IMG/VR virus record: IMGVR_UViG_3300046542_000291
Coordinates: 62,001 to 126,000 of that record
Reading direction: 5' to 3' (one strand)
Length of the DNA: 64,000 nt
Position 1 is the stretch's first letter, and each line of letters begins with the position of its first letter. A program made the translations under genes and the position numbers. The notes under the pieces are model-generated. The model was not told the origin of the DNA and did no database searches. It saw only the letters and a program-made list of their open reading frames with translations. This document shows positions 8,317 to 61,354 of the stretch, in pieces.

Positions 8317-8332
8317 CCGCCCCGAAGGGCGG
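8317..8332 (-). terminator. cUUCGg hairpin terminator
   Basis: CCGCCCTTCGGGGCGG. Confidence 0.7.
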
Positions 8333-8340
8333 CCAGGTTG

Positions 8341-8628
8341 TTAACCTTCGAAGTCAAATGACATTCGAAGTTCTTCGGCCCCACGGGGCATGTTCCACAG
8401 AACGAGAGCGTACTGACCTGCAGGCTTTTCCAGCTTGCGGAGCAGTTTGTACATCCACTCGGGTTCGTTCATGTAGGCATGTGCCGTGTACATGCAGAGA
8501 TCCCAGTCAGCACTGTGCCAGTGGTCGTTGGTTGGTTTCGGAGCCTTCCAGAGAAGGATCTTCGACGCCGTACCCTGACACAGTTGACCGATGACCTCGG
8601 TACCGTCATACAACCGGATGGAGTGCAC
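8341..8628 (-). CDS. hypothetical protein
   Basis: ORF in gene train (GTG start). Confidence 0.7.
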   Translation of the reverse strand: MHSIRLYDGTEVIGQLCQGTASKILLWKAPKPTNDHWHSADWDLCMYTAHAYMNEPEWMYKLLRKLEKPAGQYALVLWNMPRGAEELRMSFDFEG

Positions 8629-16727: not shown

Positions 16728-16736
16728 GTAATATAG
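16728..16736 (-). promoter_or_regulatory. phiKZ-type early promoter
   Basis: CTATATTAC with upstream AT-rich element. Confidence 0.85.
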
Positions 16737-24531: not shown

Positions 24532-24540
24532 GTAATATAG
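24532..24540 (-). promoter_or_regulatory. phiKZ-type early promoter
   Basis: CTATATTAC. Confidence 0.85.
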
Positions 24541-32339: not shown

Positions 32340-32348
32340 GTAATATAG
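32340..32348 (-). promoter_or_regulatory. phiKZ-type early promoter
   Basis: CTATATTAC. Confidence 0.85.
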
Positions 32349-32390
32349 GCTTTTAAAACGTTTGAATAGACAAAAAGAAAACGGCATACA

Positions 32391-32408
32391 CCAGCCCCGA
32401 AGGGCTGG
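32391..32408 (-). terminator. cUUCGg hairpin terminator
   Basis: CCAGCCCTTCGGGGCTGG. Confidence 0.8.
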
Positions 32409-32419
32409 CTTATGTGAGC

Positions 32420-32764
32420 TTAACCTTCGACTGTTTCAACATCCAGGAAAAGCTTGACAGCATCACCGACTACGGGTAACATCTTGTCACTCACCAGAAT
32501 GATGACATCGCCCGGGTAGAGCAAAGTGGTGTACTGGTGGTTGTCGCCATGGGTCAACTGCCAGACGACGTAGTCAACAGCGGCATCAGCCCGGAAGAAG
32601 ACTTTATCCCGCGTCAGGACACGTTGAAAGTTTTCGAGATCCAGACCAACTGTTGGGTAGAACTGTTGCCCGTCGGTCTCCCCATCCCCGCACACTTCGG
32701 CATGGCCGACTTGAAGACCAGAGTGGGTAGTACCGAATTTGTCTTTGATGATTACTTTAGTCAC
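32420..32764 (-). CDS. hypothetical protein (domain shared with 44001..45344)
   Basis: IIKDKFGTTHSG...LYPGDVIILVS vs KITDALEHSYEG...MEAGDLILLYS. Confidence 0.7.
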   Translation of the reverse strand: MTKVIIKDKFGTTHSGLQVGHAEVCGDGETDGQQFYPTVGLDLENFQRVLTRDKVFFRADAAVDYVVWQLTHGDNHQYTTLLYPGDVIILVSDKMLPVVGDAVKLFLDVETVEG

Positions 32765-32776
32765 GACAACACTTCC

Positions 32777-33202
32777 TTACATTACGCGGAATTCACCGCT
32801 AGCCAGTTCAACGATCTTGATTTGCTCACCGCCACGGATCTGATGGTCCGCTGAAGCCGTTAGCATTTGGGTACTGCCATTGAAGCTGACCAGCAGGTTA
32901 CACCCCCAGGTTTCTTTGCCCATGGAGTTACCAACCGCACCGCCAGCCAAACCACCTGCGATACCACCCAGCAGGCCACCAGCACCTTTGCCGAATAACA
33001 TCTTGCCAACGATAGCGCCACCCACAGCACCAACACCACCACCCACTACCGTTTTGCCAGTAGTGTCTTCTTTGTTTACCAGTTGACACGATGCCGTATC
33101 AACGGTAGCATGAGTTACCGATTTGACGCCTTCTGCTTTGGCGCAGGCAGACAGCAACATTGCAGCAGTGGCTACCGCAACCAGCAGTACACGATTTTTC
33201 AT
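32777..33202 (-). CDS. glycine-zipper 2TM lipoprotein (SlyB-like)
   Basis: lipobox LLSAC; GGGVGAVGGAIVG...GGIAGGLAGGAVG. Confidence 0.85.
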   Translation of the reverse strand: MKNRVLLVAVATAAMLLSACAKAEGVKSVTHATVDTASCQLVNKEDTTGKTVVGGGVGAVGGAIVGKMLFGKGAGGLLGGIAGGLAGGAVGNSMGKETWGCNLLVSFNGSTQMLTASADHQIRGGEQIKIVELASGEFRVM

Positions 33203-33211
33203 TTCAGTTCC

Positions 33212-33481
33212 TTAGTAGAGGATGAGTTTGACTTTTACAGCGTTGTAGGTGAACGTCCAGACTTCCCCTTCCGTTGTCCAGTGAGGACGCATGGTGATAT
33301 CGACAGGTTGGTTAGGACGGGTAACGTTTCGGATATGCCGAAGCATTTCCTTCACGGAGGAATCGAAGAACAGATTCTCGTTTTCCACCGTACACTTCCA
33401 GTGCTTGGTACGGGTGAACGGAATTTTGATTGCATGACACAACCAGATCCAGAAGATGTAAGGAATCGCCCAGAGACTCAT
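33212..33481 (-). CDS. hypothetical protein
   Basis: TAATG-coupled; resembles 43677..43997. Confidence 0.7.
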   Translation of the reverse strand: MSLWAIPYIFWIWLCHAIKIPFTRTKHWKCTVENENLFFDSSVKEMLRHIRNVTRPNQPVDITMRPHWTTEGEVWTFTYNAVKVKLILY

Positions 33482-34194
33482 TAGCGTTCCCCGGCAGCGT
33501 CACACACATCGAAACGTTCAACACCCGTTTCATCGGGTAGTTCTTCACGCACAACCACCGGTTTTAGTGGTGGTAGTTCGGGAGCTTTACCGAAACCTTC
33601 GATGGCAGCTGCTTTGAGCGCAGCGCTCTCCATCTCCGATTCACCCTGGAAGTTGCTGAAGGTGATGGTCTTCGTTACTTCATTGTTACGGAAGACGAAA
33701 TCTTTCATGCCCAGACCTGGATGCCCACCAGTGGCATGAGCCAACAAGCAATGCATAGCCTGGACGCGGGACAACTTGTCAGGGGTGGCCTCGAACTTAT
33801 AGATGAGGGGTTCCCCGTAGAATTCTCCACGGTCATTCTGGGAGTGTAGATGAACCACACCAGTAGCGACGCCATTGATCATCAAGATCTCAGCGAAGGT
33901 GTGGCGCCAGAAGTCACCACCTGGCCAGTGGTAGTGGGGCCAGCTGTTATCACCGAACAGCGAGTTGAACGCACCCGTCAAAGTGTCACGGGTTCCGTAA
34001 TGACCACTGCCACGACCGAAGACGGTTTCACGAGCATGGGCCAGAATGCCGATGTTGATCCCGTGAACATCACCTGTAGGGCCGACGATGTGAATATCAG
34101 GTTGAAGGTGCCCGGCATCATTGACCAACTGATCAATTACGAGGGCAAGTTTCTCACGCGATTCACCTTTAATATCCGCTGTGTTGCGTTGCAT
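33481..34194 (-). CDS. hypothetical protein
   Basis: 237-aa ORF after terminator. Confidence 0.8.
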   Translation of the reverse strand: MQRNTADIKGESREKLALVIDQLVNDAGHLQPDIHIVGPTGDVHGINIGILAHARETVFGRGSGHYGTRDTLTGAFNSLFGDNSWPHYHWPGGDFWRHTFAEILMINGVATGVVHLHSQNDRGEFYGEPLIYKFEATPDKLSRVQAMHCLLAHATGGHPGLGMKDFVFRNNEVTKTITFSNFQGESEMESAALKAAAIEGFGKAPELPPLKPVVVREELPDETGVERFDVCDAAGER

Positions 34195-34240: not shown

Positions 34241-35641
34241 TTATTCTTCGTCGTCTTTCTTCTTTTCCAAATACTGAGTACTTACAGCTTTAAAGCTGAA
34301 CACTCGGTCGGTGCACTTGAACACCAGTCCTTCGCGGTAAGTTTTCTTCGGTTGTTTCGGATCGACATTGAACGCACGCGGACCTTCAGCCATCAGGAGA
34401 ATATCCTGAATAGTAGTGCCCACCGGAATAACAAACTTCTCATGCATGACCGGGACGTAAGGAAGGCCGATGGCAGCACATACACCACGAGCTTCTTCCG
34501 GCAACAACTCCTGGCTACCATTGCGGTATACGCTGTAGACATGGTATTCAACATCTTCCACGCCTTCGAAGCCAGACTGGATATCTGGACCGATCAGCTC
34601 GCCTTGAACAGTGATGTATTCACCTGTCTCTTCCTGGTACGCCTTCAGCTTCTCAACCACCTTGTTCTTGGTGACGTAGCGGGTGAAGTTCCGGGAGGTG
34701 CTGTCGCCAATACCGGTGTTGGCTTTCCATTCAGGGACGTGAAGGTTGTTCATACGGAACGCCCATTTGCCATCTTCGTCCTTGAAGAACCACGACTTCG
34801 GTTTTAGGAAGTTGCGGTTGCGCGCCAGGAGGGTACCGATCCAGTAACGGATCTGATCTGGTTTGGACCATTCCTCGTCACCGATAACCAACTCGTAGTT
34901 ACGCGAGCAAACGCCAGTACGAACACCACCATCATCCAGGCAGAATACCGTCATGGAGCTACCGTCGAGTTTCCAGGTAACTTCGAATTCAGTGCCTTCC
35001 GCCTTTGCCGCTTCGAACGCGACTGTCTTGTTCTGGATACGATCCTGATCAGACTTGAGCAGTTGCTTCGGCCATGGCAGGAGAGCATTACCCACGTTAC
35101 CGAGGATCTTACGTACCAGACGCATGTACCAGCCAGAACCAGCTGCAGCCTGTTGCGCCGGCGACATGAGTGGCTTGGCTGCAAACTTCAGGATGCCCAG
35201 CTCCAACGTCATGTTGGTTTCAGCTGGAAGGTCTTTGTATTTCTCTGGGAGTGGTACAACCAACCCCTGGGCCAGCTCCTTACGAAGACGGAGCGTGCGC
35301 AAACGGTGATAAGCCTTACCGTTGATCAGGCGGTTATCGGAACGGCGTGCCTCGAGGAACCCGAACAGTGGGTTATCGATTGGCAACAGCGAGTCGATCT
35401 CGCAGTACACCACACGGTCACCCTTCTTGTATTCGTCCAGCTTGACCACGCACTGCCAGCCGCCGATGATTGCCAGAGACAAGGCATCAGCATTTGGATG
35501 TTTGATCACGTCGTCAAGTACGACGATACGCGCCAGTTTGCGGTCGGTTTCAACCACCCCGTTCCCCTCACGGATTGGTTTGAGTTCAGCAGCTACATCG
35601 GGGGTAGCGGTTGCGACTTCGATCTTTTCTACGACAGACAT
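34241..35641 (-). CDS. ATP-dependent RNA ligase, DRB0094/Rnl5-like
   Basis: N-terminal OB-type HPNADAL...GW...YCEIDS; motif I TWKLDGSS; CSRN; VQGELIGP; EGLVFK; SFKAVS. Confidence 0.9.
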   Translation of the reverse strand: MSVVEKIEVATATPDVAAELKPIREGNGVVETDRKLARIVVLDDVIKHPNADALSLAIIGGWQCVVKLDEYKKGDRVVYCEIDSLLPIDNPLFGFLEARRSDNRLINGKAYHRLRTLRLRKELAQGLVVPLPEKYKDLPAETNMTLELGILKFAAKPLMSPAQQAAAGSGWYMRLVRKILGNVGNALLPWPKQLLKSDQDRIQNKTVAFEAAKAEGTEFEVTWKLDGSSMTVFCLDDGGVRTGVCSRNYELVIGDEEWSKPDQIRYWIGTLLARNRNFLKPKSWFFKDEDGKWAFRMNNLHVPEWKANTGIGDSTSRNFTRYVTKNKVVEKLKAYQEETGEYITVQGELIGPDIQSGFEGVEDVEYHVYSVYRNGSQELLPEEARGVCAAIGLPYVPVMHEKFVIPVGTTIQDILLMAEGPRAFNVDPKQPKKTYREGLVFKCTDRVFSFKAVSTQYLEKKKDDEE

Positions 35642-35657: not shown

Positions 35658-35906
35658 TTATTGCAAAGGTTTGCAGGTTACAGTGATTTTTGCCATACGG
35701 CTCGACAGTGCGCCACCATCGACTCTCGATTCAACGTAGTCTTTGGTTTCTTTGACGAGGTAAGGCTTCATGCCGTATGTCTCTACGACTTGTTCAATTG
35801 CGGCTGGACACGTGTTGGCATCTGACAGTTCTGTGACTGTTGGTGCACCACCAGGTCCTGCGCCTGTATTGAACGCAAATGCGATAACAAGTAACGCTTT
35901 CATCAT
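35658..35906 (-). CDS. small exported 2-Cys protein
   Basis: hydrophobic N-terminus, TCPAA...TCKP. Confidence 0.7.
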   Translation of the reverse strand: MMKALLVIAFAFNTGAGPGGAPTVTELSDANTCPAAIEQVVETYGMKPYLVKETKDYVESRVDGGALSSRMAKITVTCKPLQ

Positions 35907-37186
35907 TACCCCTTAACGCAGAGAACCTGCTTCAGCGTGTGGACGATCTCGACGAGTTCAGCCTGAGCTGCCATCACGTCTTCGATGTTCTTGTACGCCT
36001 TCGGGGTCTCATCGAGCACACCTTCATCTTTACGGCATTCAACACCAGCCGTATCGCGGATGTGATCTTCGATGGTGAAGTTACGGTTAGCCGCTTTACG
36101 CGACATCACACGACCAGCACCATGCGAACAGGAGCAGAACGACTCACGGTTGCCCTTACCACGAACGATGAACGACTTCGCACCCATCGACCCTGGGATA
36201 ATACCCAGAGTACCTTCCTCGGCGTTTACGGCACCTTTACGGGTAACCAGAACGTTCTCACCGAAGTGACGTTCCTGGGACACGTAGTTGTGGTGGCAAT
36301 TGATTGCCGCCATGTCGGTGTCGATTGGCAGGTTCAGGGTTTTGTGGATCGCCCCCAGAACAGCCTTCATCATGAGCGTACGATTCAGTGCTGCGAAACG
36401 CTGTGCCCACGATACCGCCTGCAGGTAGTCGTCGTAGTACTTGGTACCGTGTGGCAGGTAAGCCAGATCTTGGTCTGGTAGATGGATAAAGAAACGACCC
36501 ATCTCTTCCTTTGCCTTGTTGATGAAGTACTGACCGATCGCATTCCCGATACCACGGGAACCAGAGTGCAGCATTACCCACACACGCTGTTCCTCGTCCA
36601 AGCACAGCTCAACGAAGTGGTTACCGGTACCGAGAGTACCCACATGGTTCCACGCCCGTTGTGCAGCCTTGGTGAGCTTCGGGTGTTTCTCAACGATTTG
36701 GTTCAGTTGCGTTCGCAACTTCTCCGCTTCAGCAGCGATCATGATGTCCTTGTTATCGAACACAGTCACCTTACCGAAAGCACCACGGTCGTTTGGACCA
36801 CCGTTGTCAGTACGGCCATGTGGTACTACCGCTTCGATAGCTGCCCGCAGATGGCCGAGGCTATCTGGCAGTTGGTCTGCACCGAACGTCAAGCGACGAG
36901 CGGCCATTCCGCACCCGATATCGACCCCCACCGCAGCGGGAATGATTGCACCTTTAGTAGCAATGACGCTACCGACAGTGGCACCCAACCCGAAGTGTAC
37001 GTCCGGCATTACTGCAACGTGCGAATGGATGAACGGCAACGACGCCAGGTTCTTCAACTGCTTGACTGCGGTCTCTTCGACTGGAACCCCCACGGTCCAG
37101 CCTTTAATCGGCTTCGAACCCGGTTCAGGTTCGCCACCAATGATTTCGAAAGACTTATCTTGCTGCTGGGATTTCTTTTGTTTCAT
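35906..37186 (-). CDS. rtcB: RtcB RNA ligase (3'-phosphate/5'-OH)
   Basis: MPDVH, GVDIGCG, GTLGTGNHF, HSGSRG, HHNY, SHGAGR, DETPKAYK. Confidence 0.97.
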   Translation of the reverse strand: MKQKKSQQQDKSFEIIGGEPEPGSKPIKGWTVGVPVEETAVKQLKNLASLPFIHSHVAVMPDVHFGLGATVGSVIATKGAIIPAAVGVDIGCGMAARRLTFGADQLPDSLGHLRAAIEAVVPHGRTDNGGPNDRGAFGKVTVFDNKDIMIAAEAEKLRTQLNQIVEKHPKLTKAAQRAWNHVGTLGTGNHFVELCLDEEQRVWVMLHSGSRGIGNAIGQYFINKAKEEMGRFFIHLPDQDLAYLPHGTKYYDDYLQAVSWAQRFAALNRTLMMKAVLGAIHKTLNLPIDTDMAAINCHHNYVSQERHFGENVLVTRKGAVNAEEGTLGIIPGSMGAKSFIVRGKGNRESFCSCSHGAGRVMSRKAANRNFTIEDHIRDTAGVECRKDEGVLDETPKAYKNIEDVMAAQAELVEIVHTLKQVLCVKG

Positions 37187-37218: not shown

Positions 37219-37470
37219 CTAAACGTTGTTTATTTCTTTGATGTAAGCAAAGGCCTCATCACGGTAGAAGACATGACCATTATGGTTACCCATGTCCGCT
37301 ACCGCTTCATTGAGTTCCCTTTCGAACCACCAGTACCACTCCGGCCCCTTTGGTTGATAACGGGCACACCACTTAGCGTATTCCAGCAAGTTGCATGCAC
37401 AGTTACCACGAGGGACCTGGGGCTCTTTAGGTGGAGTCTTACCAAAGACTCGGCGTAACCATTCGACCAT
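37219..37470 (-). CDS. hypothetical protein
   Basis: TAATG-coupled. Confidence 0.7.
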   Translation of the reverse strand: MVEWLRRVFGKTPPKEPQVPRGNCACNLLEYAKWCARYQPKGPEWYWWFERELNEAVADMGNHNGHVFYRDEAFAYIKEINNV

Positions 37471-37850
37471 TACGCCACTGCCGCCTCACCAAACGTCAGC
37501 TCTTTGTAAAGCTGCGGTTTCGGAGGCATCAGGGTGATACCACTGCAAGCACTGAAATGGGCCTGAATGGTTTCGTTGCGTTCCTGGCGGATGTAATCGT
37601 AGTTGAACAGGAACCCGTCCAACTCAACTTGATTAATCGCCTTGGTCGGATCGATGTAACTGGTTTCCCACGGACCAACCTCATGGTTAACCGAATGGAA
37701 CAGCACACCGGCTGTTTTCTCAGCCAGGGATTGCATCCCGGTCATGACCTTGGAATAGAAGCGTTCGATCAACAAGCGTTGCTGCTTAGGAGAACTGGCA
37801 CTCCAGATAGCCGAGCCATAATGTTCTACAACCTGTTCTGTACGTTCCAT
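37470..37850 (-). CDS. hypothetical protein
   Basis: GAGGT RBS. Confidence 0.75.
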   Translation of the reverse strand: MERTEQVVEHYGSAIWSASSPKQQRLLIERFYSKVMTGMQSLAEKTAGVLFHSVNHEVGPWETSYIDPTKAINQVELDGFLFNYDYIRQERNETIQAHFSACSGITLMPPKPQLYKELTFGEAAVA

Positions 37851-37865: not shown

Positions 37866-39182
37866 TTATGCCGCTTTGAGAAGGGGCAATGTGGGGATGG
37901 ATGCAATAAAGGCATCCGGGTCACGGCGATGTTCAAGGAACAACGCTTGCAGGTCACAGCCCGCTATGTCCTCGAAACACCCACTGAATTCGTAGGTATG
38001 CTCCGGGAACACAACATGGATGTACTCGCGTACTTCTACATCGGTCAAGTAACCGATTTCCATCAGGTGGTCCACTCGACCTTTACGAACTACCGCATCA
38101 TCGATCTTGTCGATGTGGTTGGTAGTCATGAAGATCACCGTGCCGTTCAGCGAAACCACCCCGTCCAACACGTTGAGCACTTTGCTCAGGGTCAACCGGG
38201 AGAACTCTTCGTTCAGGGCTTCGAAGATGTTTGCTTCCGCAACTTTCTTCTTGGCTGGCGCCGCCGGTAAAGCACCGAGTGTTTCCACCGGTTCAACCTT
38301 TGGCTTCTTCGGTGTACGCGCCTTGAAGGCAGCCGAACTGTCGAAGTCTTCGATCAACACCACCGAGTTCGGGGGCAGGTGACTGAGGGCTTTCTCGAAT
38401 GACGTATCGTCCATCGAGTTGATGTTGATGGTGCAGATGTTCTTGCCGAAGTGGGCAGCCAGTGCCTTGATGATACTGGTCTTGCCTGTACCTGGCTTAC
38501 CGTGGATAACAAACGTCGACTTGTAAGCCATGCCACGTTCGTTGTACCACTCTTCACTTTCGTAGAACTGTTCCAGCTCGAAGATCAACTTATCCTTCGT
38601 AGCTTTGTTCATCGCTACCGTCTTGAGAGGACGCTTCTTGATCTCACACAGGTACTGCCAGCCTTGATCACCGGTGTACGTATAGATGCGGGACTTCAGT
38701 GAGTTCTCTTTCGGCATGAACGAACTGACCAGGTCCTTCAACACTTGTTGATTACGACCCCAGGTGAAAATCGTGACGCGTTCTTTCTCGTTGGTTGACC
38801 CTTGACTGTTCAATGCTTCTTTCTTGAACCAGTACAGGCGTCTCTTATAAACGAAGAAGTGTGTGCCGAAACCAGGGCCTATAATTGTCCGGCTGTTGGG
38901 TGACTCCAAGCTGATGTTCCGCGAGTAGCGTGACCAGGGTTGTTCACAGAACCACTGCATGAAGGACGTGAAGTGAACACGGTCTTCTGACCAAGCGGTG
39001 GCGTTGTTGAACGTCAGGCTGGTCATGCATTGTTTCAGTGTGGCCGAGTACACCGTTTTGGGCACCTGCCGCAGTATCGCGTACAGGAACCCCATTAGGC
39101 CAGCAAGGACGATGCCTGCTGCCCAGGGGGAAACCTTGTTGAATGTCAGGTATTGCTGCTGAAGCCAATCAATAAATTCCAT
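37866..39182 (-). CDS. BCS1-like membrane-anchored AAA+ ATPase
   Basis: N-terminal TM, PGFGTHFFVY (BCS1_N-like), WYNERG, Walker A GKPGTGKT, Walker B VLIEDFD, LNVLDG, MTTNH, RKGRVD. Confidence 0.9.
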   Translation of the reverse strand: MEFIDWLQQQYLTFNKVSPWAAGIVLAGLMGFLYAILRQVPKTVYSATLKQCMTSLTFNNATAWSEDRVHFTSFMQWFCEQPWSRYSRNISLESPNSRTIIGPGFGTHFFVYKRRLYWFKKEALNSQGSTNEKERVTIFTWGRNQQVLKDLVSSFMPKENSLKSRIYTYTGDQGWQYLCEIKKRPLKTVAMNKATKDKLIFELEQFYESEEWYNERGMAYKSTFVIHGKPGTGKTSIIKALAAHFGKNICTININSMDDTSFEKALSHLPPNSVVLIEDFDSSAAFKARTPKKPKVEPVETLGALPAAPAKKKVAEANIFEALNEEFSRLTLSKVLNVLDGVVSLNGTVIFMTTNHIDKIDDAVVRKGRVDHLMEIGYLTDVEVREYIHVVFPEHTYEFSGCFEDIAGCDLQALFLEHRRDPDAFIASIPTLPLLKAA

Positions 39183-39250: not shown

Positions 39251-41032
39251 TTATGCAGCTTCGCGCAGGGTTGCACGAACTTCTTCGAAGGTCACTTCGT
39301 TCGGGAACGTGCCGTCTTTGTAGATCGGACGCAGTTCACCCGAGTGAGTGTCGAGGTCAGCGATTTCGAACTTCTGCTCTTGGAGCAGCTCAAAGTCACC
39401 GGCTTCGTTCTTCACAACCTTCAGGAAGCCCTTGGCCGACTTCTTGTTGGTTTCGCCTTCGGTCTTCGGCGCCTTGAACAGCTCAACGAACACGTCGTCC
39501 ACTTGAACGGCGGTAGCCTTGATGGCGTAGCCGAAGGTGTCACGAGTGTTGTGCTGATAGGTGTACGAACCGATACCCAGAACCCAGTTGCACGAAGCGA
39601 AGCCTTTCTTCATCAGGCGACGCATGATTTCCTGGGTACGTTCCACAGTGATCGAATCACCGTAGATCAGGCCAACACGTTCGTGCAGCACTTTGAAGCC
39701 CTTGTCGGTCATGGTGCCACCGAAAGTGTTCCACAGGCATTCCACCGCACCGATCTGTTCGGCGTTCAGTTCTACCGGAGCCCACAGGTAGCCCAGAGCC
39801 GTGTAGTACTTCTCGGCGTCTTCAGCACTGATCGGATTTTCGTAGCGGGTTGCTTTGTACGTCATGCCGTTCAACAGAACGTACTCGACGTCTTTCGCTT
39901 TGCCGTTGTTGACCAGTTCGCTGAATTCCAGCGAGTTGTGAACTTCCACACCGCAGATGACTTCAACAGGATCACCGGAATCCGGACGGAACACCACTTT
40001 GGCCAGGCCGTTGGCGTCTGGTTGACGAGCCAGGATTTCTTCCTTCAGGGAAGGGGCAACAATGGTCAGGACACCCCAGAAGTCGAAGCTGTCGCAGACC
40101 AGGCTGATGATGCCAGTAGGACACTTGACGGTAATGGCATCCAGGATGAACTGACGCTCGGCCAGCAGTTGCGCTTTGCCGTATGCATCGGGATCGAGGT
40201 CACCACCAGTCAGGCCTTTTTCCAGCAGCCACTTGGTCATGTTGTACAGGATGTTCGAAGTAGCAACGGCGTGTTCGGTAGCACGCACCGATACAGCCAG
40301 GAACTCGACGTCGCTGTTGGCGAAGTACATGTCTTCGGCGTAGTCGATGGCCGGCAGGGTATCGGTACCCACGAAGCTGGTCAGGTGACCGGCGCCAGTA
40401 CGAGCAGCATCTTCAGGACCGGACAGGCCACGGAAGGCGAAGTCATGCCCTTGCAACGCAACGAAGTCACGAGGCGAACCAGTCAGGTCAGCGAAGTGTT
40501 CCAGGATGCGACGGTATTCGTAAGCGATGGTGGCGTTGCAGACCATTTTCCAGATCAGCGACGACATCAGGGTTTCCAGGTAGTTCACTACCCAGAAGAA
40601 TTCCGGTACGGTGTTGTAGATCACGTAGCCCGGAACGTTCATGTTCAGGCGAGAGCCTTCCGGTACCGACAGGATGGTAACCGGTAAGTAACCCAGGTCA
40701 TGCAGTGCTGCCATGGCTTCGATGTCAACCATACCTTCACCGAGGTAGTTCTTCATGCGGCGAGCGTAGCGACGGATCACTTGCTCTTTCGGCTTGCTGA
40801 AGAACGAATCGTGCCACAGGCCGTGAACTTCACGCATCACGCCTTGGATACCGAACCAGACGACTTTGCTATCCCAGAGGTAGGACTGGGACTTGCTGCC
40901 CTTGAACAGACGGTCTGCACGTGGAGTGCCGTTACCGTAGGCGAAGTTGGTGCCGTTCGGGTACAGAGGGCCGTGACCCATTTTGTAACCGTCTGCTGCA
41001 GTCGGGCCAAACAGTTTGAAAGAAGTGCTCAT
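39251..41032 (-). CDS. NAMPT-family phosphoribosyltransferase (probable NARP1 Namat)
   Basis: ADGYKMGH, HDFAFRG, GTDT, ATEH, RPDSGDP, IYGDSIT, GIGSYTYQ, TRDT, KKSAKG; start moved to MSTSF. Confidence 0.9.
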   Translation of the reverse strand: MSTSFKLFGPTAADGYKMGHGPLYPNGTNFAYGNGTPRADRLFKGSKSQSYLWDSKVVWFGIQGVMREVHGLWHDSFFSKPKEQVIRRYARRMKNYLGEGMVDIEAMAALHDLGYLPVTILSVPEGSRLNMNVPGYVIYNTVPEFFWVVNYLETLMSSLIWKMVCNATIAYEYRRILEHFADLTGSPRDFVALQGHDFAFRGLSGPEDAARTGAGHLTSFVGTDTLPAIDYAEDMYFANSDVEFLAVSVRATEHAVATSNILYNMTKWLLEKGLTGGDLDPDAYGKAQLLAERQFILDAITVKCPTGIISLVCDSFDFWGVLTIVAPSLKEEILARQPDANGLAKVVFRPDSGDPVEVICGVEVHNSLEFSELVNNGKAKDVEYVLLNGMTYKATRYENPISAEDAEKYYTALGYLWAPVELNAEQIGAVECLWNTFGGTMTDKGFKVLHERVGLIYGDSITVERTQEIMRRLMKKGFASCNWVLGIGSYTYQHNTRDTFGYAIKATAVQVDDVFVELFKAPKTEGETNKKSAKGFLKVVKNEAGDFELLQEQKFEIADLDTHSGELRPIYKDGTFPNEVTFEEVRATLREAA

Positions 41033-41045
41033 TACTTTGTTTTCC

Positions 41046-41921
41046 TTACGCATTGATCCAGGTGAGTTTGTTATCGACAACACCGTCTGGGCGAGTACTG
41101 CCCTGTGCTGTCGGATGGAACGAGTTGGTGGTGTAGACGTGGTCGTACTTTTCAGTAACCAGGTCGAAACCGTACGAGAAGATCCCGTGCGTTACCAACA
41201 GTTCCAATCGTGCTGGATTATGCTTGCGGATTTCTTCAGCCAGTTGGATGAAGGTCCGTCCACCATCACAGATGTCGTCACAGACCAGCAGTCGTTTGCC
41301 AGTTACATCGGCATCGAACTTGGTCTTGGTGATTTCCATCGTTTCCAGGTCACGCTCTTTAGTAGCCGTGATGTAACCAGCGCAGCCCAGGTGAGCAGCC
41401 AACGCTTTCACTTTCTTGACAGCCCCTGCATCAGGAGCCACCAGCCAGGTATCGTGCAGTTCGTTTGCCGTAGCATCCAACATGTGCACGATGTCAGCCT
41501 GGGTCTTGACGATCACGCGGTTGATCAACGCCGGCGTAGTGTCGCTGTGCGGGTCCAAAATGGTCACACTGACGAACTCACAGAGGTTGATCAACTTCGC
41601 TGCTACCGCAATACCCAACGACTCCCCGGGGTTACACACGCGGTCCTGCCGGGCGTAAGGGACATAAGGGATATATGCGCTTACCGGTACGTCGGGACGA
41701 ATGCGACGGATCGCATCGGTAACGTGCAGTAAAGCGAGGAAGTCAGTTGGGGTACGGAGGTTGGCCATGACTTGAATGTCCATGCAACCGCGGATTTTGT
41801 TGTGGAACTCTTTCGGAATAAGTGGGTTAACTTCCCCACCTTTGAACGTGCTCACGTCAACGATAGTCTGCGCCACTCCCCAGTGGTCGCCATTGCCGCG
41901 TCGGATACTTAAACGAATCAT
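41046..41921 (-). CDS. ribose-phosphate pyrophosphokinase family (probable NARP1 Adps)
   Basis: FKGGE, PYVPYARQDR, DPHS, APDAGA, DDICDGGRTF, VTHGIFS. Confidence 0.9.
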   Translation of the reverse strand: MIRLSIRRGNGDHWGVAQTIVDVSTFKGGEVNPLIPKEFHNKIRGCMDIQVMANLRTPTDFLALLHVTDAIRRIRPDVPVSAYIPYVPYARQDRVCNPGESLGIAVAAKLINLCEFVSVTILDPHSDTTPALINRVIVKTQADIVHMLDATANELHDTWLVAPDAGAVKKVKALAAHLGCAGYITATKERDLETMEITKTKFDADVTGKRLLVCDDICDGGRTFIQLAEEIRKHNPARLELLVTHGIFSYGFDLVTEKYDHVYTTNSFHPTAQGSTRPDGVVDNKLTWINA

Positions 41922-41972: not shown

Positions 41973-42203
41973 TTACGCTGCGACCTGTAACAATGCTGGG
42001 TTCCATGGAATACGGCCTTCGAACATCTGTTCACGTTCAGAGAGTTCGGCCACAGGTTTACGGCCTTCCAGCTTACGCCAGGCCTTATCAAGGTCAGCCA
42101 TGTGCTTGTCCAGTTCTTTGGTTTTCTTGAGTGTTGCCAACTCATAACCACCCGAACCAGGCATCATCATGGTGCCGTCTTTATAGCGGATTGGCTTAGC
42201 CAT
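41973..42203 (-). CDS. small hypothetical protein (C-terminal -QVAA)
   Basis: TGATG-coupled ORF. Confidence 0.7.
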   Translation of the reverse strand: MAKPIRYKDGTMMMPGSGGYELATLKKTKELDKHMADLDKAWRKLEGRKPVAELSEREQMFEGRIPWNPALLQVAA

Positions 42204-42556
42204 CAGTAACCCACCGAGCGTTGGATGAAGGCGATGAATGCCGGGAAGTTCTCTTCCATTACTTTAACGATAGTATCGGGATCAGTTTCAATCCCCATGT
42301 CGTTATCGTAAAGGGAAGGATCTTTGTAGGTGAAGTGACTACCGGAATTGTCAATCCGGAACTCCAGGGTAAGCTTACCCTTCTTCAATGTGTAGGCGGC
42401 ATAAGCGGTAGATTGACTACCATAATCCAAACGACGGCATTGGATGGTTACACCCGAATGCATTTGTGGTTCGGATTGGATCTTGTCCGCTTCTTCCCGG
42501 TGGTGAATGATAGCCGCTTTGTAGAGAGCAGCCCACAATCTGAGTTTATAGTGCAT
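42203..42556 (-). CDS. hypothetical early protein
   Basis: first gene after early promoter; GAGGA RBS. Confidence 0.75.
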   Translation of the reverse strand: MHYKLRLWAALYKAAIIHHREEADKIQSEPQMHSGVTIQCRRLDYGSQSTAYAAYTLKKGKLTLEFRIDNSGSHFTYKDPSLYDNDMGIETDPDTIVKVMEENFPAFIAFIQRSVGY

Positions 42557-42588: not shown

Positions 42589-42597
42589 GTAATATAG
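42589..42597 (-). promoter_or_regulatory. phiKZ-type early promoter (drives Prs/NAMPT operon)
   Basis: CTATATTAC. Confidence 0.85.
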
Positions 42598-42635
42598 ATT
42601 TCAAATAAAATGGAGTAAAAAAGAAACGGAATAAA

Positions 42636-42655
42636 GCCTCTCCCGAAGGAGAGGC
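42636..42655 (-). terminator. cUUCGg hairpin terminator
   Basis: GCCTCTCCTTCGGGAGAGGC. Confidence 0.8.
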
Positions 42656-56233: not shown

Positions 56234-56242
56234 GTAATATAG
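56234..56242 (-). promoter_or_regulatory. phiKZ-type early promoter
   Basis: CTATATTAC. Confidence 0.85.
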
Positions 56243-58653: not shown

Positions 58654-58662
58654 GTAATATAG
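58654..58662 (-). promoter_or_regulatory. phiKZ-type early promoter
   Basis: CTATATTAC. Confidence 0.85.
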
Positions 58663-58885: not shown

Positions 58886-59310
58886 CGGAAGTACTCCTTT
58901 CTCGACAACGAATACAACGAAGCATCCAGTTTAGTGAATGCCGCTGTGGTCCGTTCTTCATAGGTATCGATGCGTCGAGCGATCAGGGGATCGGTACAAC
59001 ACACCATACACGTGTTACACAGGACCGTGACCTTGTCAGCATGGAACGAGAGTTTGTGTTCCTCGCATTCCATATCAAAGACAATGTTGGCCATGGTCTT
59101 GCGATGAGCATCGTAGATAGCCGCACGGTCTCGCCGACGTTGCCACCGGACTAGCCAACCATCAAGCCACCCAAGAGGCAGCATGACGTTAAAGGCTGCC
59201 CGTACGTACTCGTAGCACCCCCCAGCGCTATGCTTACGTCTCCACGACTGATACATCTGTTCCCGCTGATACACCCTGCGGGCTATGAAGTTGTTCAGGA
59301 CTTGCGACAT
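58882..59310 (-). CDS. hypothetical protein with Cys/His cluster
   Basis: CEEH...CNTCMVCC; AGGAG RBS. Confidence 0.7.
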   Translation of the reverse strand: MSQVLNNFIARRVYQREQMYQSWRRKHSAGGCYEYVRAAFNVMLPLGWLDGWLVRWQRRRDRAAIYDAHRKTMANIVFDMECEEHKLSFHADKVTVLCNTCMVCCTDPLIARRIDTYEERTTAAFTKLDASLYSLSRKEYFR

Positions 59311-61354
59311 TCACAATCTCCTTCAGGCCGTTTGCATCAAACAGCAAGATGCCCAGGTTAAGTTCCTGAGCTGTTTCTAGTTTGTGTGCAGCGTATTTCG
59401 TACCGAGGACAACCAGGTGCGTTCCTTTCGTAGGCAGACTGGTAATCTTAGCCCCTAAGCTCTTGTAGCCCGCTTCAACCTGCTTGCGAGTAAGCTCCCC
59501 GAACTTACTACCACTTACAACTACCGTCTTACCCTCGAGCTCTGCGGAGACTCGAGGGGGCGGAGCGATCATGGTCTTGATGCAGGTCTTCACGGTTTCG
59601 CACAACAACCGATTACGTGATTCATTGAACCAGGTAATAATAGCTGCTGCTTTTACCTTGCCGATATCCTTAATGGCTTCCAGTTCCTCGAACGATGACT
59701 TTGTGAACGCATCGAAGTTCTGGAAGTACACCGCTAACCGTTCAGCTGTGCCTTCCCCTACCTCGGGAATACACAGCGCTGCGATCACGCGTTCCAATGG
59801 CTGGGTTTCTGCTTTGCGTAGCTCTTTATAAAGCTTATGCCCCATACGCTCGGAATCTAGGAACTGAGCACATTGTCCTTCAGTCCAACCGAACATATCC
59901 CAGAACGGGGTGGAAGAGATACTGGATTGATAGCCCACCAGGCTCTTCGCATTCTCCACGCCGAAGTCACGGATATCCAGAACGTTACGACCCCCTTGGT
60001 AATAGAAGGTCATTGCCAACCGACCAGGACACTGTTCGTTAACGCACGTCAACGTAGTGGCCTTCTTCGGTTGCTTGTCCCGAACGAGTTCCTTCTTACA
60101 GCATGGGCAGTGGGTTGGGATCTCGATGGGCTTAGCCGTCGATGGACGTAATGCCACCAAAGCCTTGATCACCTTCGGAATCACATCCCCCGCACGTTTG
60201 ATGACTATCGTGTCACCGTAGTGCAGATCCAAACGCAACACTTCATCCACCCCATGCAACGTCGGGGAGGAAATGGTAGTGCCGTGAATGAATACCGGGT
60301 CAGTTGCACCCACCGGCGTGATTTGCCCCGTCCGCCCTACCTGCCATTCAACATCATGGAGGATAGTCGGACCTTCCGAGGCTGGGAACTTATAAGCCGT
60401 TGCCCATCGTGGACTACGGTTACGCGAACCCAATTCATCACGGTGCCGTTGGAGGTCAACCTTGAACACAATACCGTCGATCTCGTATTCATCGAAAGAC
60501 GCACGTAGCGCCTTGAAATGATCAAGCATCGTCTGTACTGATTTCTCATCGTGTGACTCAAAGGAATGCAGTCCACACAACTCAGCTACTTCAAAACCGA
60601 AGTCCTGAAGTCTGTTCATCGCGGCACCCCAACCAAAGGGGTCGTCCGCATTGTTGTAGTCGGTGTCGTAAGCCACGAAGGACAACTCACGCGTGCCGGT
60701 TACGGCTGCGTCTTTCTGACGCAAAGAACCAGCTGCGTAATTACGGCAGTTGACAAACGTCTTCTCGCCATCTTTTGCCAACTTGGCATTGATTGCATCG
60801 AAGACATCTTTCTTGACTACTACTTCCCCGCGAACGGAGATTTCTTCTGGGTCACCTTTCTTCCAAGGAATAACCCGAGGAACGAAAGCCACGTGATAGA
60901 TGTTCATTGTAACGTCTTCACCGACGCTACCATCACCACGCGTAGCAGCACGCTTCAGTCGACCATGGTCATATAACAGTTCAACCGCCAGACCGTCAAC
61001 CTTCACTTGCCCCCAGATATTGACCCAACCAACAACATCCGCTACCGACATTGCCCATGCCAATACTTCAGCCGCGTTGAAGGTGTTACCCAACGACAAC
61101 ATTGGAGCTGTGTGCTTTACACGACGGAAGTGGTTTGCTGGAGCATGACCCACCAGGTCGGTAGGTGATTTGTTGTCCCCGTAGAGTTCTTTCAACTCAG
61201 GGTGAGCTGCTTCAATCTCTATCAGCCGACGACGCATTTGATCGTAGACTGGATCTTCCACATCACTCTGGTCGAGGATATAGTAGCTGTAGTCCAGCTT
61301 ACCGATAAAGAGCCGCAGTTTGGCGTACTCTTCTTCGATCTCTTTGGTAGCCAT
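59234..61354 (-). CDS. ligA: NAD-dependent DNA ligase
   Basis: YY..D...DPVYD, PMLSLGN, KVDGLA, TRGDG, RGE, DGIVFK, GRTG, RAGDVIP, Zn finger, HhH, BRCT. Confidence 0.97.
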   Translation of the reverse strand: MATKEIEEEYAKLRLFIGKLDYSYYILDQSDVEDPVYDQMRRRLIEIEAAHPELKELYGDNKSPTDLVGHAPANHFRRVKHTAPMLSLGNTFNAAEVLAWAMSVADVVGWVNIWGQVKVDGLAVELLYDHGRLKRAATRGDGSVGEDVTMNIYHVAFVPRVIPWKKGDPEEISVRGEVVVKKDVFDAINAKLAKDGEKTFVNCRNYAAGSLRQKDAAVTGTRELSFVAYDTDYNNADDPFGWGAAMNRLQDFGFEVAELCGLHSFESHDEKSVQTMLDHFKALRASFDEYEIDGIVFKVDLQRHRDELGSRNRSPRWATAYKFPASEGPTILHDVEWQVGRTGQITPVGATDPVFIHGTTISSPTLHGVDEVLRLDLHYGDTIVIKRAGDVIPKVIKALVALRPSTAKPIEIPTHCPCCKKELVRDKQPKKATTLTCVNEQCPGRLAMTFYYQGGRNVLDIRDFGVENAKSLVGYQSSISSTPFWDMFGWTEGQCAQFLDSERMGHKLYKELRKAETQPLERVIAALCIPEVGEGTAERLAVYFQNFDAFTKSSFEELEAIKDIGKVKAAAIITWFNESRNRLLCETVKTCIKTMIAPPPRVSAELEGKTVVVSGSKFGELTRKQVEAGYKSLGAKITSLPTKGTHLVVLGTKYAAHKLETAQELNLGILLFDANGLKEIVNVASPEQLHSPQGVSAGTDVSVVET

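What the first reader, a model, noticed from the sequence alone, without database searches (positions are those of the whole stretch)
39251..41921. Prs-like + NAMPT-like pair: NARP1-type NAD+ reconstitution under an early promoter
Adjacent, co-oriented genes with no NMN adenylyltransferase in the window match NARP1 (Adps makes ADPR-PP from ADP-ribose; Namat adds nicotinamide), which counters NAD-depleting defences such as Thoeris, DSR and SIR2-HerA. The system is known, but here it heads an ~8-kb block with BCS1, RtcB and Rnl, forming a metabolite-and-RNA repair island.
Basis: established knowledge. Interest (0 to 1): 0.6.

Follow-up and report, generated by a model that had tools for sequence, protein, structure and literature searches.

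The report
Jumbo-phage NARP1 NAD+ rebuilding gene pair
Two neighbouring genes of a 310-kb soil jumbo phage are a new copy of the known NARP1 pathway, by which phages rebuild NAD+ from the fragments left by bacterial NAD+-destroying defences; the find is sound but ordinary.

Summary
On the minus strand, 41046-41921 encodes a 291-aa Prs-like protein and 39251-41032 a 593-aa NAMPT-like protein, 13 nt apart.

Every computational criterion that separates NARP1 (Adps + Namat) from Prs/Nampt salvage is met:
- Both proteins fall in the Adps-linked clades (SH-aLRT 99 and 100).
- The Namat clamp motif is present (GSYTYQHNTRD, with Arg41 in the loop).
- The ICP1 Adps catalytic and PP-loop residues are conserved (K188, DDICDG, F224).
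- The best solved structure, by sequence and by fold, is SpbetaL1 Namat.
- The complete 310,396-bp genome has no NMNAT, Nudix or RyR gene.

The closest named relative is Pseudomonas phage Phabio, whose pair is already listed as NARP1 in the founding paper.

The "early promoter" also holds. A phiKZ-type TATATTAC motif (18 in the genome, all on one strand) lies at 42589-42596. However, the pair are genes 3-4 of a roughly 10.2-kb, 13-ORF unit bounded by terminators.

The link to RNA repair (RtcB, Rnl) is conserved among relatives but only weakly enriched across phages (P 0.006; 0.06 after collapsing kin).

Verdict: a new member of a known kind, with low novelty. Enzyme activity was not tested.

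The parts
42636..42655 (-). Intrinsic-terminator hairpin (GCCUCUCC-UUCG-GGAGAGGC followed by UUUAUU) that closes the preceding transcription unit.
   Evidence: Found by the terminator scan. It folds at -19.1 kcal/mol, z = -4.4 against shuffles.
42589..42619 (-). Promoter. The TATATTAC motif lies at 42589-42596 (phiKZ-type early consensus) inside an AT-rich stretch. The same stretch also reads as a sigma-70-like TTTACT-17-TATATT.
   Evidence: TATATTAC occurs 7 times in the window against 0.47 expected, and 18 times in the genome, always on the minus strand. Each site is intergenic, 4-66 nt before the first start codon that opens an ORF of 40 aa or more. The consensus for phiKZ and 201phi2-1 is quoted in PMC7058600. 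Motifs of this kind are early virion-RNAP promoters according to PMC7598289. The sigma-70-like match is not above chance.
42203..42556 (-). First ORF of the unit (117 aa), function unknown.
   Evidence: Begins 32 nt after the promoter motif, behind an aagagg ribosome-binding site. No Pfam match; only a weak match to PHROG 29424.
41973..42203 (-). Second ORF (76 aa), function unknown. Its start overlaps the previous stop (TGATG).
   Evidence: PHROG 6391 at 2.3e-15. Homologues lie within about 9 kb of the pair in five related jumbo-phage lineages, seen in loci L005-L011, three of which are near-identical.
41046..41921 (-). Adps (ADP-ribose pyrophosphokinase, Prs-like), 291 aa.
   Evidence: Family matches. 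It falls in the clade of Namat-linked Prs-like proteins that includes the validated ICP1 Adps, separated from canonical Prs by a branch with SH-aLRT 99. The ICP1 residues F18, R87, H121, D161, K185, D212-D216 and F221 are conserved here as F26, R91, H125, D164, K188, D215-D219 and F224. The PP loop reads DDICDGGRTF against DDMIDTGGTL in E. coli Prs.
39251..41032 (-). Namat (nicotinamide ADP-ribose transferase, NAMPT-like), 593 aa. It carries two insertions relative to SpbetaL1 Namat, at about residues 261-298 and 362-427.
   Evidence: The best solved-structure sequence match is SpbetaL1 Namat (9w5w/9w5x, 372 bits) against about 135 bits for mammalian or Xanthomonas NAMPT. The SCH motif is G488-S-Y490-T-Y-Q-H494-N-T-R-D498, and the SCL Arg41 aligns with R40. 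The Namat clade is separated from NARP2 Nampt with SH-aLRT 100. The AlphaFold2 model has pLDDT 90.9, and its best fold match is 9w5x with TM 0.94 on the target.
37866..39182 (-). BCS1-like AAA+ ATPase (438 aa) with a hydrophobic N-terminal segment; role unknown.
   Evidence: Pfam BCS1_N 7.6e-16 and AAA 4.4e-16; PHROG 7485 at 4e-133. A homologue sits directly upstream of Adps in loci L005-L011.
37219..37850 (-). Two small ORFs of unknown function (126 aa at 37470-37850; 83 aa at 37219-37470).
   Evidence: No significant Pfam or PHROG matches.
35906..37186 (-). RtcB RNA ligase (joins 3'-phosphate or 2',3'-cyclic phosphate ends to 5'-OH ends), 426 aa.
   Evidence: Pfam RtcB 2.1e-128; PHROG 1075 at 5.9e-150. 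In L003 an RtcB gene lies directly upstream of Adps.
34241..35641 (-). ATP-dependent RNA ligase (PHA02142 OB fold plus RNA_ligase domain), 466 aa.
   Evidence: Pfam PF21189 5.5e-24 and PF09414 2.5e-19; PHROG 968 at 4.5e-101. Homologues at 59-65% identity lie 4-6 kb from Namat in L005-L012.
32420..34194 (-). The last four ORFs of the unit (237, 89, 141 and 114 aa). The 141-aa product has a glycine-zipper membrane motif; the others are unknown.
   Evidence: ORF list; family scans.
32372..32409 (-). Terminator-like hairpin (GCCAGCCC-UUCG-GGGCUGGU) followed by a U-rich run. It ends the unit, and the next TATATTAC promoter lies at 32340-32347.
   Evidence: Fold of 32370-32440 on the minus strand gives -23.5 kcal/mol, z = -2.6. 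Promoter list.
59234..61354 (-). Context: the phage's own NAD+-dependent (LigA-type) DNA ligase, 706 aa. It is a direct consumer of NAD+.
   Evidence: PF01653 DNA_ligase_aden 2.7e-71 at G000:C1:122380-123135, which is window 60380-61135. ORF coordinates.

Best explanation
The two genes are a NARP1 module of a phiKZ-like, Phabio-related jumbo phage from a rhizosphere metagenome.

Inferred mechanism, by homology with the characterised SpbetaL1, Bas63 and ICP1 enzymes:
1. A host NADase defence (Thoeris, DSR1/2, SIR2-HerA and similar) cleaves NAD+ into ADP-ribose and nicotinamide.
2. Adps (41046-41921) transfers the beta,gamma-pyrophosphate of ATP to the 1'' hydroxyl of ADP-ribose, giving ADPR-PP.
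3. Namat (39251-41032) couples ADPR-PP to nicotinamide and regenerates NAD+ in one step, so no NMN adenylyltransferase is needed.

What is shown here:
- Gene structure and adjacency.
- Family and clade membership.
- Conservation of the residues that were mutated or seen contacting ligands in the solved structures.
- Absence of an NMNAT in the complete genome.
- The promoter and terminator architecture.

What is inferred:
- The substrates.
- The anti-defence role.
- Early timing. The pair lies in a roughly 10.2-kb unit that starts at a phiKZ-type TATATTAC motif, the kind read by the virion RNA polymerase straight after injection. The enzymes would therefore be made before or while defences fire.

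The phage also carries its own NAD+-dependent DNA ligase, which gives it a direct stake in the NAD+ pool.
For: - Pfam and PHROG assignments.
- The best solved relative of the second protein is SpbetaL1 Namat, by sequence (372 bits against about 135 for NAMPT) and by fold (TM 0.94).
- The Namat signature GSX-phi-X-phi-X-phi-TRD defined in PMC12774641 is present as GSYTYQHNTRD. NARP2 Nampts have GGGLLQ..(T/D/N)RD at that place. All 70 or so Adps-linked homologues surveyed carry the GS[YF] form.
- The SCL arginine (R41) aligns with R40.
- Adps residues essential in ICP1 Adps (PMC13586617) are conserved, including K188 (=K185), D215/D216, H125, D164 and the DDICDG PP loop.
- Trees: Adps-like versus canonical Prs SH-aLRT 99; Namat versus NARP2 Nampt SH-aLRT 100.
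- There is no PF01467, NUDIX or RyR gene in the complete genome.
- The Phabio homologues (55% and 70% identical) are listed as Adps and 'Adps-associated' in the founding paper's tables.
- Promoter evidence. An RNAP beta-like gene is present.
- The phage's own LigA.
Against: - Nothing biochemical was tested, and no RNA data exist for this phage.
- Position 7 of the clamp motif is His494, not the Tyr/Phe that stacks on adenine in SpbetaL1. It does recur in other Adps-linked homologues, but I found no assayed enzyme with His there.
- Two Adps ligand contacts differ: ICP1 F92 is C96 here, and F223 is Q226.
- Namat enzymes keep PRPP-dependent NMN synthesis in vitro.
- The next-closest solved protein is a genuine NadV from Haemophilus ducreyi (9ke8), so similarity alone does not fix the substrate.
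- Of the experimentally validated proteins, only ICP1 Adps was in my Adps tree. SpbetaL1 Namat was compared only through the PDB searches. Bas63 was represented by an Ounavirinae phage, Sf18, which I assume to be related.
- Early timing rests on analogy with the phiKZ and 201phi2-1 promoter consensus.
Confidence: 0.85

Rival explanations
1. This is a conventional salvage pair. The first enzyme is a true PRPP synthetase and the second a true Nampt/NadV that makes NMN. The host's NadR or NadD then finishes NAD+ synthesis, making this a NARP2-like route that borrows the host adenylyltransferase.
For: The fold and most catalytic residues are shared with Prs and Nampt. Namat retains PRPP-to-NMN activity in vitro (PMC12774641). 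The second-best solved relative is Haemophilus ducreyi NadV. Clamp position 7 is His rather than Tyr/Phe.
Against: Both proteins sit inside the Adps-linked clades, separated from canonical Prs and from NARP2 Nampt by branches with support 99 and 100. The PP loop is the Adps type DDICDG, not the Prs type DDMIDTGGT. H. ducreyi NadV lacks the aromatic residue at clamp position 3 (GAQTYQRNTRD), whereas this protein has Tyr490. In the founding study 94% of phages with a KVP40-type Nampt also encode an Nmnat; this complete genome has none.
Confidence: 0.08
2. The pair is mainly a housekeeping metabolic module. It keeps NAD+ high for the phage's own NAD+-dependent DNA ligase and for other needs of a large genome, whether or not any host defence is present.
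For: The phage encodes a LigA-type ligase at 59234-61354. Homologous Adps-Namat pairs are common in bacterial chromosomes, usually next to the ADPR-sensing regulator NrtR, which implies a housekeeping role for ADPR recycling there.
Against: LigA turns NAD+ into NMN and AMP, not ADP-ribose, so NARP1 chemistry does not recycle the ligase's by-product. ADP-ribose becomes abundant mainly when NADases act. Deleting NARP1 in Bas63 and Fado gave a phenotype on defence-carrying hosts. This reading is not exclusive of the main one.
Confidence: 0.05

Closest known systems
NARP1 of Pseudomonas phage Phabio (MF042360; PHABIO_343 and PHABIO_347)
   Same: Same phage lineage: a jumbo genome of about 309 kb. 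Adps is 55% and Namat 70% identical. The clamp motif is the same (GIGSYTYQHNTRD) and so is the PP loop (DDICDGGRTF). A thymidylate synthase lies nearby. The Phabio pair is already listed as Adps and 'Adps-associated' Namat in Osterman et al..
   Different: In Phabio three small ORFs separate the two genes, and no BCS1-like, RtcB or RNA-ligase gene is annotated or detected within the 12 kb I fetched on either side. Here the genes abut and share a unit with RtcB, Rnl and the AAA ATPase. Phabio's second Namat insertion is shorter.
Validated NARP1 enzymes: SpbetaL1 Namat (PDB 9w5w/9w5x), Bas63 and Fado operons, ICP1 Adps
   Same: Two-gene Adps-then-Namat order. The Nampt-like catalytic core is conserved, including the His, Asp and Arg residues invariant in my alignment. 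The SCH motif and SCL arginine are present, as are the Adps Lys185, Asp212/213 and PP-loop equivalents. Fold TM is 0.94.
   Different: Identity is only about 36% (Namat) and 32-38% (Adps). Namat is about 100 residues longer: a helical hairpin at about 254-303, and a small beta-rich insert at about 362-427 modelled with lower confidence (pLDDT 60-83). Clamp position 7 is His rather than Tyr. Adps has Cys96 and Gln226 where ICP1 has Phe92 and Phe223.
NARP2 (KVP40-type Nampt + Nmnat) and NARP3 (PnuC-like + NadR-like)
   Same: The same goal of restoring NAD+. NARP2's first enzyme belongs to the same NAMPT superfamily (26-28% identical to this protein).
   Different: NARP2 Nampts have GGGLLQ in place of the aromatic clamp, a short SCL, no Prs-like partner and an Nmnat in the genome. 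None of these applies here. NARP3 needs a NadR-like enzyme, whose adenylyltransferase domain I take to belong to PF01467 (not checked here); that family has no match in this genome.
Bacterial NrtR-linked 'prs-nadV' operons
   Same: They belong to the same Adps-like and Namat-like clades, with the same DDICDG and GS[YF][TS]Y motifs and the same gene order.
   Different: They are chromosomal and sit next to a NUDIX/NrtR_WHD regulator in 7 of 8 loci sampled. The phage has no such regulator and uses a phage promoter instead.

Membership tests
NARP1 (Adps + Namat) | The Prs-like protein falls in the Adps clade, separate from canonical Prs (Osterman et al. criterion). | tested here: met
   Tree of 47 proteins. 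All Namat-linked Prs-like proteins, including the validated ICP1 Adps, are split from six canonical Prs and one divergent paralogue by a branch with SH-aLRT 99. The window protein groups with Phabio and L003 at support 100. SpbetaL1 and Bas63 Adps themselves were not in the tree.
NARP1 (Adps + Namat) | A Namat homologue lies in the immediate vicinity of adps (true of 97% of the Adps clade). | tested here: met
   The genes are 13 nt apart on the same strand.
NARP1 (Adps + Namat) | Namat falls in the Adps-associated clade, distinct from the KVP40-type Nampt clade. | tested here: met
   SH-aLRT 100 on the branch separating KP15, D525, IME13 and CcrRogue Nampts from the Adps-linked clade.
NARP1 (Adps + Namat) | [quoted passage not shown] | tested here: inconclusive
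   The motif, its spacing and position 3 (Tyr490) are met. Position 7 is His494, not Tyr/Phe. His also occurs at this position in other Adps-linked homologues: Phabio, L003, Snenia and four bacterial ones. I found no assayed enzyme with His there.
NARP1 (Adps + Namat) | The selectivity-clamp loop supplies a stacking Arg, Lys or Tyr (R40 in SpbetaL1). | tested here: met
   In TPRADR, Arg41 aligns with R40 of 9w5x. The loop is 9 residues longer.
NARP1 (Adps + Namat) | Adps catalytic lysine and remodelled PP loop (ICP1 K185; C215-S220). | tested here: met
   K188 is present. The PP loop reads D215-D-I-C-D-G-G-R-T-F224, against ICP1 DDICDGAASF and E. coli Prs DDMIDTGGTL.
NARP1 (Adps + Namat) | No Nmnat in the same genome. 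| tested here: met
   PF01467 gives no match at E<=1 in the complete 310-kb genome, while the controls ring in 14 of 14.
NARP1 (Adps + Namat) | ADPR + ATP gives ADPR-PP, ADPR-PP + nicotinamide gives NAD+, and the pair rescues phage from NAD+-depleting defences. | not testable with these tools
   This needs purified proteins with LC-MS, and infection assays.
NARP1-AP (NARP1 with associated Macro-domain phosphatase Adpp) | A Macro-domain gene within two genes of the NARP1 pair. | tested here: not met
   None of the flanking ORFs has a Macro match. The only Macro gene lies about 145 kb away (G000:C1:248304-248633). It belongs to PHROG 335, as do the NARP1-adjacent Macro proteins of K5 and phiAbaA1. 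Its best solved relatives are DarG macrodomains.
NARP2 (Nampt + Nmnat) | A KVP40-type Nampt, an Nmnat in the genome and no Adps. | tested here: not met
   Wrong clade, no Nmnat, and Adps is present.
NARP3 (PnuC-like + NadR-like) | A NadR-like bifunctional enzyme (NMN adenylyltransferase plus ribosylnicotinamide kinase). | tested here: not met
   No PF01467 domain anywhere in the genome. A PnuC-like transporter was not searched for separately.

The most novel reading that the evidence does not exclude
NARP1 here is not a free-standing pair. It is part of a virion-RNA-polymerase-driven immediate-early counter-defence operon whose other members work with it. In this reading the BCS1-like membrane AAA+ ATPase, conserved next to Adps in several jumbo-phage lineages, would be a new NARP1 accessory. 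The RtcB and Rnl ligases would form a co-selected partner module against RNA-cleaving abortive-infection effectors.
Probability: 0.12. Interest if true: 0.55.

Novelty: new member of a known kind. Interest (0 to 1): 0.25.

Why it matters
It adds one more uncultured, rhizosphere, phiKZ-like jumbo phage to the list of NARP1 carriers.

It also shows three things for this lineage:
- The pathway lies behind a promoter of the type used by the injected virion RNA polymerase.
- The phage has its own NAD+-dependent ligase to protect.
- The clamp position that stacks on adenine can be histidine.

None of this changes the picture of NARP1. It is useful for annotation, and it suggests Phabio on Pseudomonas fluorescens SBW25 as a tractable system for testing NARP1 timing in a phiKZ-like phage.

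The side observation may interest people who work on bacterial NAD metabolism more than the phage pair itself. Classical bacterial NrtR 'prs-nadV' operons carry the Adps and Namat signatures.

Tried and rejected
- Megablast of the pair against 50,697 phage records found nothing. Relatives are visible only at the protein level.
- An Adps/Prs alignment that included E. coli Prs and Gram-positive phage proteins was too diverse to seed a genome scan. A narrower alignment worked.
I took canonical Prs sequences from five bacterial genomes that also carry the Adps-like paralogue.
- I looked for mycobacteriophage DyoEdafos, whose NARP1 enzymes were assayed, to see whether His at clamp position 7 is validated. 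It was not among the 60 rows listed of 257 matching records, so the question stays open.
- There is no RyR-domain (RyDEP-like) or NUDIX gene in the genome.
- The RNA ligase and ATPase beside NARP1 in Pseudomonas phage K5 are not homologues of this phage's Rnl and BCS1-like ATPase. Only the P-loop matches. That resemblance is therefore analogous, not inherited.
- Test of whether RNA ligases lie closer to NARP1 than chance, on 43 large viral contigs: in 10 of 21 the ligase is within 10 kb against 4.5 expected (P 0.006). After merging obvious kin it is 7 of 18 against 3.8 (P 0.06). I do not treat the 'island' as established.
- Sigma-70-like promoter matches in the region are not more frequent than in shuffled sequence. 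Only the TATATTAC motif is significant.
- Sequencing-run search: only DNA holders, from a rhizosphere metagenome that is probably the source, and no RNA runs.
No alternative genetic code was needed, and no toxin gene was involved.
Full report
**What is there**

The window is bases 62001-126000 of a single 310,396-bp virus record. The record has direct terminal repeats and is rated 100% complete. It comes from a rhizosphere metagenome.

All genes around the finding run on the minus strand. The finding's coordinates match two ORFs exactly:
- 41046-41921, 291 aa.
- 39251-41083, whose functional start is the ATG at 41032 (593 aa). This start lies 13 nt after the upstream stop and behind an aaggaaaa ribosome-binding site. 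It agrees with the N-terminus of the closest homologue.

The first protein matches Pribosyltran and Pribosyltran_N, and PHROG 619 at 1.3e-81. The second matches NAPRTase at 1.2e-26 and PHROG 448 at 1.3e-176.

**Whose genome it is**

No phage record matches at the DNA level. At the protein level the best hit for both genes is Pseudomonas phage Phabio, a 309-kb jumbo phage of P. fluorescens SBW25 (55% and 70% identity).

The genome encodes a multisubunit-RNAP beta-like protein and a weak, below-cut-off tubulin-like ORF. Phabio is cited in reviews of jumbo-phage RNA polymerases and the phage nucleus. I treat the phage as phiKZ-like. I did not test whether it forms a nucleus.

**Is it NARP1 or Prs + NadV?**

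The literature now gives explicit criteria. Osterman et al. define NARP1 by four features: an Adps clade distinct from Prs, an adjacent Namat, a Namat clade distinct from the KVP40-type Nampt of NARP2, and no Nmnat in the genome. Lan et al. (PMC12774641) solved SpbetaL1 Namat and defined a selectivity clamp. [quoted passage not shown] Liu et al. (PMC13586617) solved ICP1 Adps. They identified K185, D212/D213, H121, D161 and a remodelled PP loop (C215-S220) as the catalytic and donor-binding elements.

I tested each criterion.

*Namat.*
- Against all PDB sequences, the best hits are the SpbetaL1 Namat entries 9w5w and 9w5x (372 bits). Next is Haemophilus ducreyi NadV (9ke8, 315 bits). Mammalian and Xanthomonas NAMPT score only about 135 bits (entry titles).
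- An AlphaFold2 model built on 38 natural homologues has mean pLDDT 90.9. Foldseek ranks 9w5x and 9w5w first, with TM 0.94-0.95 normalised by the target.
- The clamp helix reads G488-S-Y490-T-Y-Q-H494-N-T496-R-D498. The loop reads T-P-R-A-D-R41, with R41 aligned to R40.
- In my 12-sequence alignment every Adps-linked protein has GS[YF][TS]Y at this place. The NARP2 Nampts of KP15, D525 and IME13 have GGGLLQ there, and a loop shorter by 12 or more residues.
- H. ducreyi NadV has the same spacing but Gln and Arg at positions 3 and 7. The aromatic residues, not the spacing, are therefore diagnostic.
- Position 3 is met (Tyr490). Position 7 is His494, which is not the consensus. It recurs in Phabio, L003, mycobacteriophage Snenia and four bacterial Adps-linked homologues. 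I could not find an assayed enzyme with His there.

*Adps.*
- Mapped onto ICP1 numbering, F18, R87, H121, D161, K185, I194, D212, D213, I214, C215, D216 and F221 are all conserved. Here they are F26, R91, H125, D164, K188, I197, D215-D219 and F224.
- F92 becomes C96 and F223 becomes Q226.
- The PP loop is DDICDGGRTF, like ICP1's DDICDGAASF and unlike E. coli Prs's DDMIDTGGTL.
- The C-terminal region is shorter than in Prs. The paper describes this for Adps homologues.

*Trees.*
- With six canonical Prs proteins and one divergent paralogue as outgroup, all Namat-linked Prs-like proteins form one side of a branch with SH-aLRT 99. This side includes ICP1 Adps.
- With four NARP2 or orphan Nampts as outgroup, all Adps-linked Namat-like proteins form one side of a branch with support 100.
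- In both trees the window protein groups at support 100 with Phabio and a 325-kb uncultured relative.

*Genome content.*
- PF01467, the NMNAT family (which I take, from my own knowledge and unchecked here, to cover the NadD, NadM and NadR enzymes), has no match at E<=1. The same search rings in 14 of 14 control genomes.
- There is also no NUDIX or RyR gene.

*Prior listing.* Phabio's two proteins appear in the supplementary tables of Osterman et al., the Namat as 'Adps-associated'.

All computational criteria for NARP1 are thus met, with one soft spot at His494. The rival reading is a true Prs plus a true Nampt that relies on a host adenylyltransferase. It is not excluded biochemically, because Namat keeps PRPP activity in vitro. 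It runs against clade placement, the PP loop, the clamp and the rule that NARP2-type Nampts travel with an Nmnat.

**Promoter and transcription unit**

The sigma-70 scan is uninformative: 7 matches against 10.8 expected. The octamer TATATTAC is a different matter.
- It occurs 7 times in the window against 0.47 expected; none of 100 shuffles reached 7.
- It occurs 18 times in the genome, every time on the minus strand.
- Every site is intergenic and lies 4-66 nt upstream of the first start codon that opens an ORF of 40 aa or more. Many sites come just after a GC-rich UUCG hairpin.
- TATATTAC is the published phiKZ early-promoter consensus. The extended form seen here (..TTTAAA.GC TATATTAC TTT.GTG) fits the 201phi2-1 consensus (PMC7058600).
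- Such motifs are the early promoters read by the virion RNA polymerase in every jumbo phage whose transcripts were profiled (PMC7598289).

One site lies at 42589-42596, directly after a strong terminator hairpin at 42636-42655 (-19.1 kcal/mol, z -4.4). It belongs to a sub-class of four sites with a long shared upstream stretch that also reads TTTACT-17-TATATT. Use by the host polymerase cannot be excluded.

The unit it heads contains 13 ORFs: a 117-aa ORF, a 76-aa ORF, Adps, Namat, the BCS1-like AAA ATPase, two small ORFs, RtcB, the RNA ligase and four more ORFs. It ends at a UUCG hairpin plus U-run at about 32372-32409, just before the next TATATTAC at 32340-32347. No minus-strand terminator was found inside it.

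The pair are genes 3 and 4 of a roughly 10.2-kb unit and do not head it. No RNA data exist to confirm this.

**The 'repair island'**

Within the phage clade the neighbourhood is conserved but shuffled.
- Five related 305-317-kb lineages show BCS1-like, Adps, Namat, thymidylate synthase, Rnl and the 76-aa ORF in that order.
- The 325-kb relative shows RtcB, Adps, Namat and thymidylate synthase.
- Phabio has only thymidylate synthase nearby.

Among 12 unrelated NARP1 phages whose annotation I read, five have an RNA ligase or polynucleotide kinase within 5 kb: K5, phiPsa347, Hades, phiAbaA1 and Snenia. K5's ligase and ATPase are not homologous to those here.

A formal test used 43 viral contigs of 85 kb or more that carry Adps-like genes.
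- 21 carry RtcB, PF09414 or PF09511 ligases.
- In 10 of them the nearest ligase is within 10 kb, against 4.5 expected from random placement (P 0.006).
- After merging obvious relatives it is 7 of 18 against 3.8 (P 0.06).

General clustering of early auxiliary genes could explain this. I regard the island as a conserved local neighbourhood with a weak wider tendency, not a demonstrated functional unit.

**Context that bears on function**

The phage encodes its own LigA-type, NAD+-dependent DNA ligase at 59234-61354. NAD+ loss would therefore hit replication directly. LigA's by-product is NMN, which NARP1 does not use.

There is no Macro-domain Adpp within two genes, so this is not NARP1-AP as defined. 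One Macro gene lies 145 kb away among four early promoters. It falls in PHROG 335, like the Macro 'phosphatases' next to Namat in K5 and phiAbaA1. Its closest solved relatives are DarG macrodomains. Its role is open.

**Comparison and novelty**

NARP1 was described in 2024. Structures of both enzymes followed in 2025-2026. Phabio's pair is in the founding tables, and a Pseudomonas chimallivirus, Ahti, has been reported with a predicted NARP1 (PMC13573597). This locus is a new member of a known kind.

Its particular features are modest:
- A histidine at clamp position 7.
- Two insertions in Namat. Variable insertions at the second site also occur in K5 and Sf18.
- Placement behind a phiKZ-type early promoter, together with RNA-repair genes.

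**Limits**

- No biochemistry and no expression data.
- The trees were 'quick' searches with SH-aLRT support only.
- Bacterial rows were thinned to one in three.

Noticed in passing
Loci L026-L105 (bacterial genomes); e.g. L032:2687-6044, L051:2550-6552, L067:2073-5916: Adps-then-Namat pairs carrying the phage-type signatures (DDICDG PP loop; GS[YF][TS]Y..TRD clamp) are widespread in bacterial chromosomes. At least 498 species genomes matched two peptide patterns, and most of the 80 loci kept (about nine in ten) have a Namat-like gene just downstream. In 7 of 8 loci sampled a NUDIX/NrtR_WHD regulator sits beside the pair, and in Pseudoalteromonas a NADAR gene as well. These look like the classical NrtR 'prs-nadV' operons. 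From my own knowledge, NrtR's effector is ADP-ribose, which would fit ADPR-consuming NARP1 chemistry as a housekeeping route in bacteria.
   Followed up: partly
Outside the window: G000:C1:248304-248633 (locus L117:1408-1890, minus strand): This 160-aa protein is the genome's only Macro-domain protein. It lies 145 kb from NARP1 in a cluster of four TATATTAC early promoters (genome 247002-249763). It belongs to PHROG 335 'phosphatase', as do the Macro proteins directly next to Namat in phages K5 and phiAbaA1. Its best solved relatives are DarG antitoxin macrodomains (5m3i, 5m31). It could be an unlinked Adpp (ADPR-1''-P phosphatase) or an anti-DarT DNA de-ADP-ribosylase.
   Followed up: partly
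Window 3508-3515, 16728-16735, 24532-24539, 32340-32347, 42589-42596, 56234-56241, 58654-58661 (all minus strand): These are phiKZ-type early-promoter motifs (TATATTAC). Two sub-classes are visible. One has ATTGAAAGC.TTTTAAA.GC upstream and TTT.GTGAAT downstream. The other, at 24532 and 42589 in the window, shares about 35 nt (TTTTTTACTCCATTTTATTT.A.ATC) that also reads as a sigma-70-like -35/-10 pair. Many sites follow a GC-rich UUCG-loop terminator, which gives a regular terminator-promoter punctuation of the genome.
   Followed up: partly
Window 59234-61354 (minus strand): A phage-encoded NAD+-dependent (LigA-type) DNA ligase of 706 aa (PF01653, 2.7e-71). It is a direct NAD+ consumer in the same genome as NARP1.
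   Followed up: partly
Window 37866-39182 (minus strand); L005-L011 at about 7330-8590: A BCS1-like AAA+ ATPase with BCS1_N and AAA domains and a hydrophobic N-terminal segment (PHROG 7485, function unknown). It lies directly after Namat here and directly before Adps in the related lineages of loci L005-L011 (three of these loci are near-identical). Its role in a phage is unexplained.
   Followed up: no
Window 46219-47592 (minus strand): A thymidylate-synthase-family protein of 457 aa, far longer than the 266-position Pfam profile, which matches in two stretches. Homologues stay close to the NARP1 pair in all related jumbo phages. Whether it is a plain ThyA with an insertion or a pyrimidine hydroxymethylase-type enzyme was not examined.
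   Followed up: no
Window 44001-45344 and 45371-46174 (minus strand): Two adjacent ORFs (447 and 267 aa) with P-loop NTPase motifs only: weak nSTAND3, AAA_22 or CbiA-type matches confined to the Walker A region. They have no PHROG function and lie just upstream of the NARP1 unit.
   Followed up: no
Loci L014, L018, L120, L123, L124 (phages K5, Snenia, phiPsa347, Hades, phiAbaA1): In five unrelated NARP1 phages an RNA ligase or polynucleotide kinase is annotated within 5 kb of the Adps-Namat pair. The ligases belong to different families, so the arrangement is analogous, not inherited. The statistical test was borderline after kin correction.
   Followed up: yes
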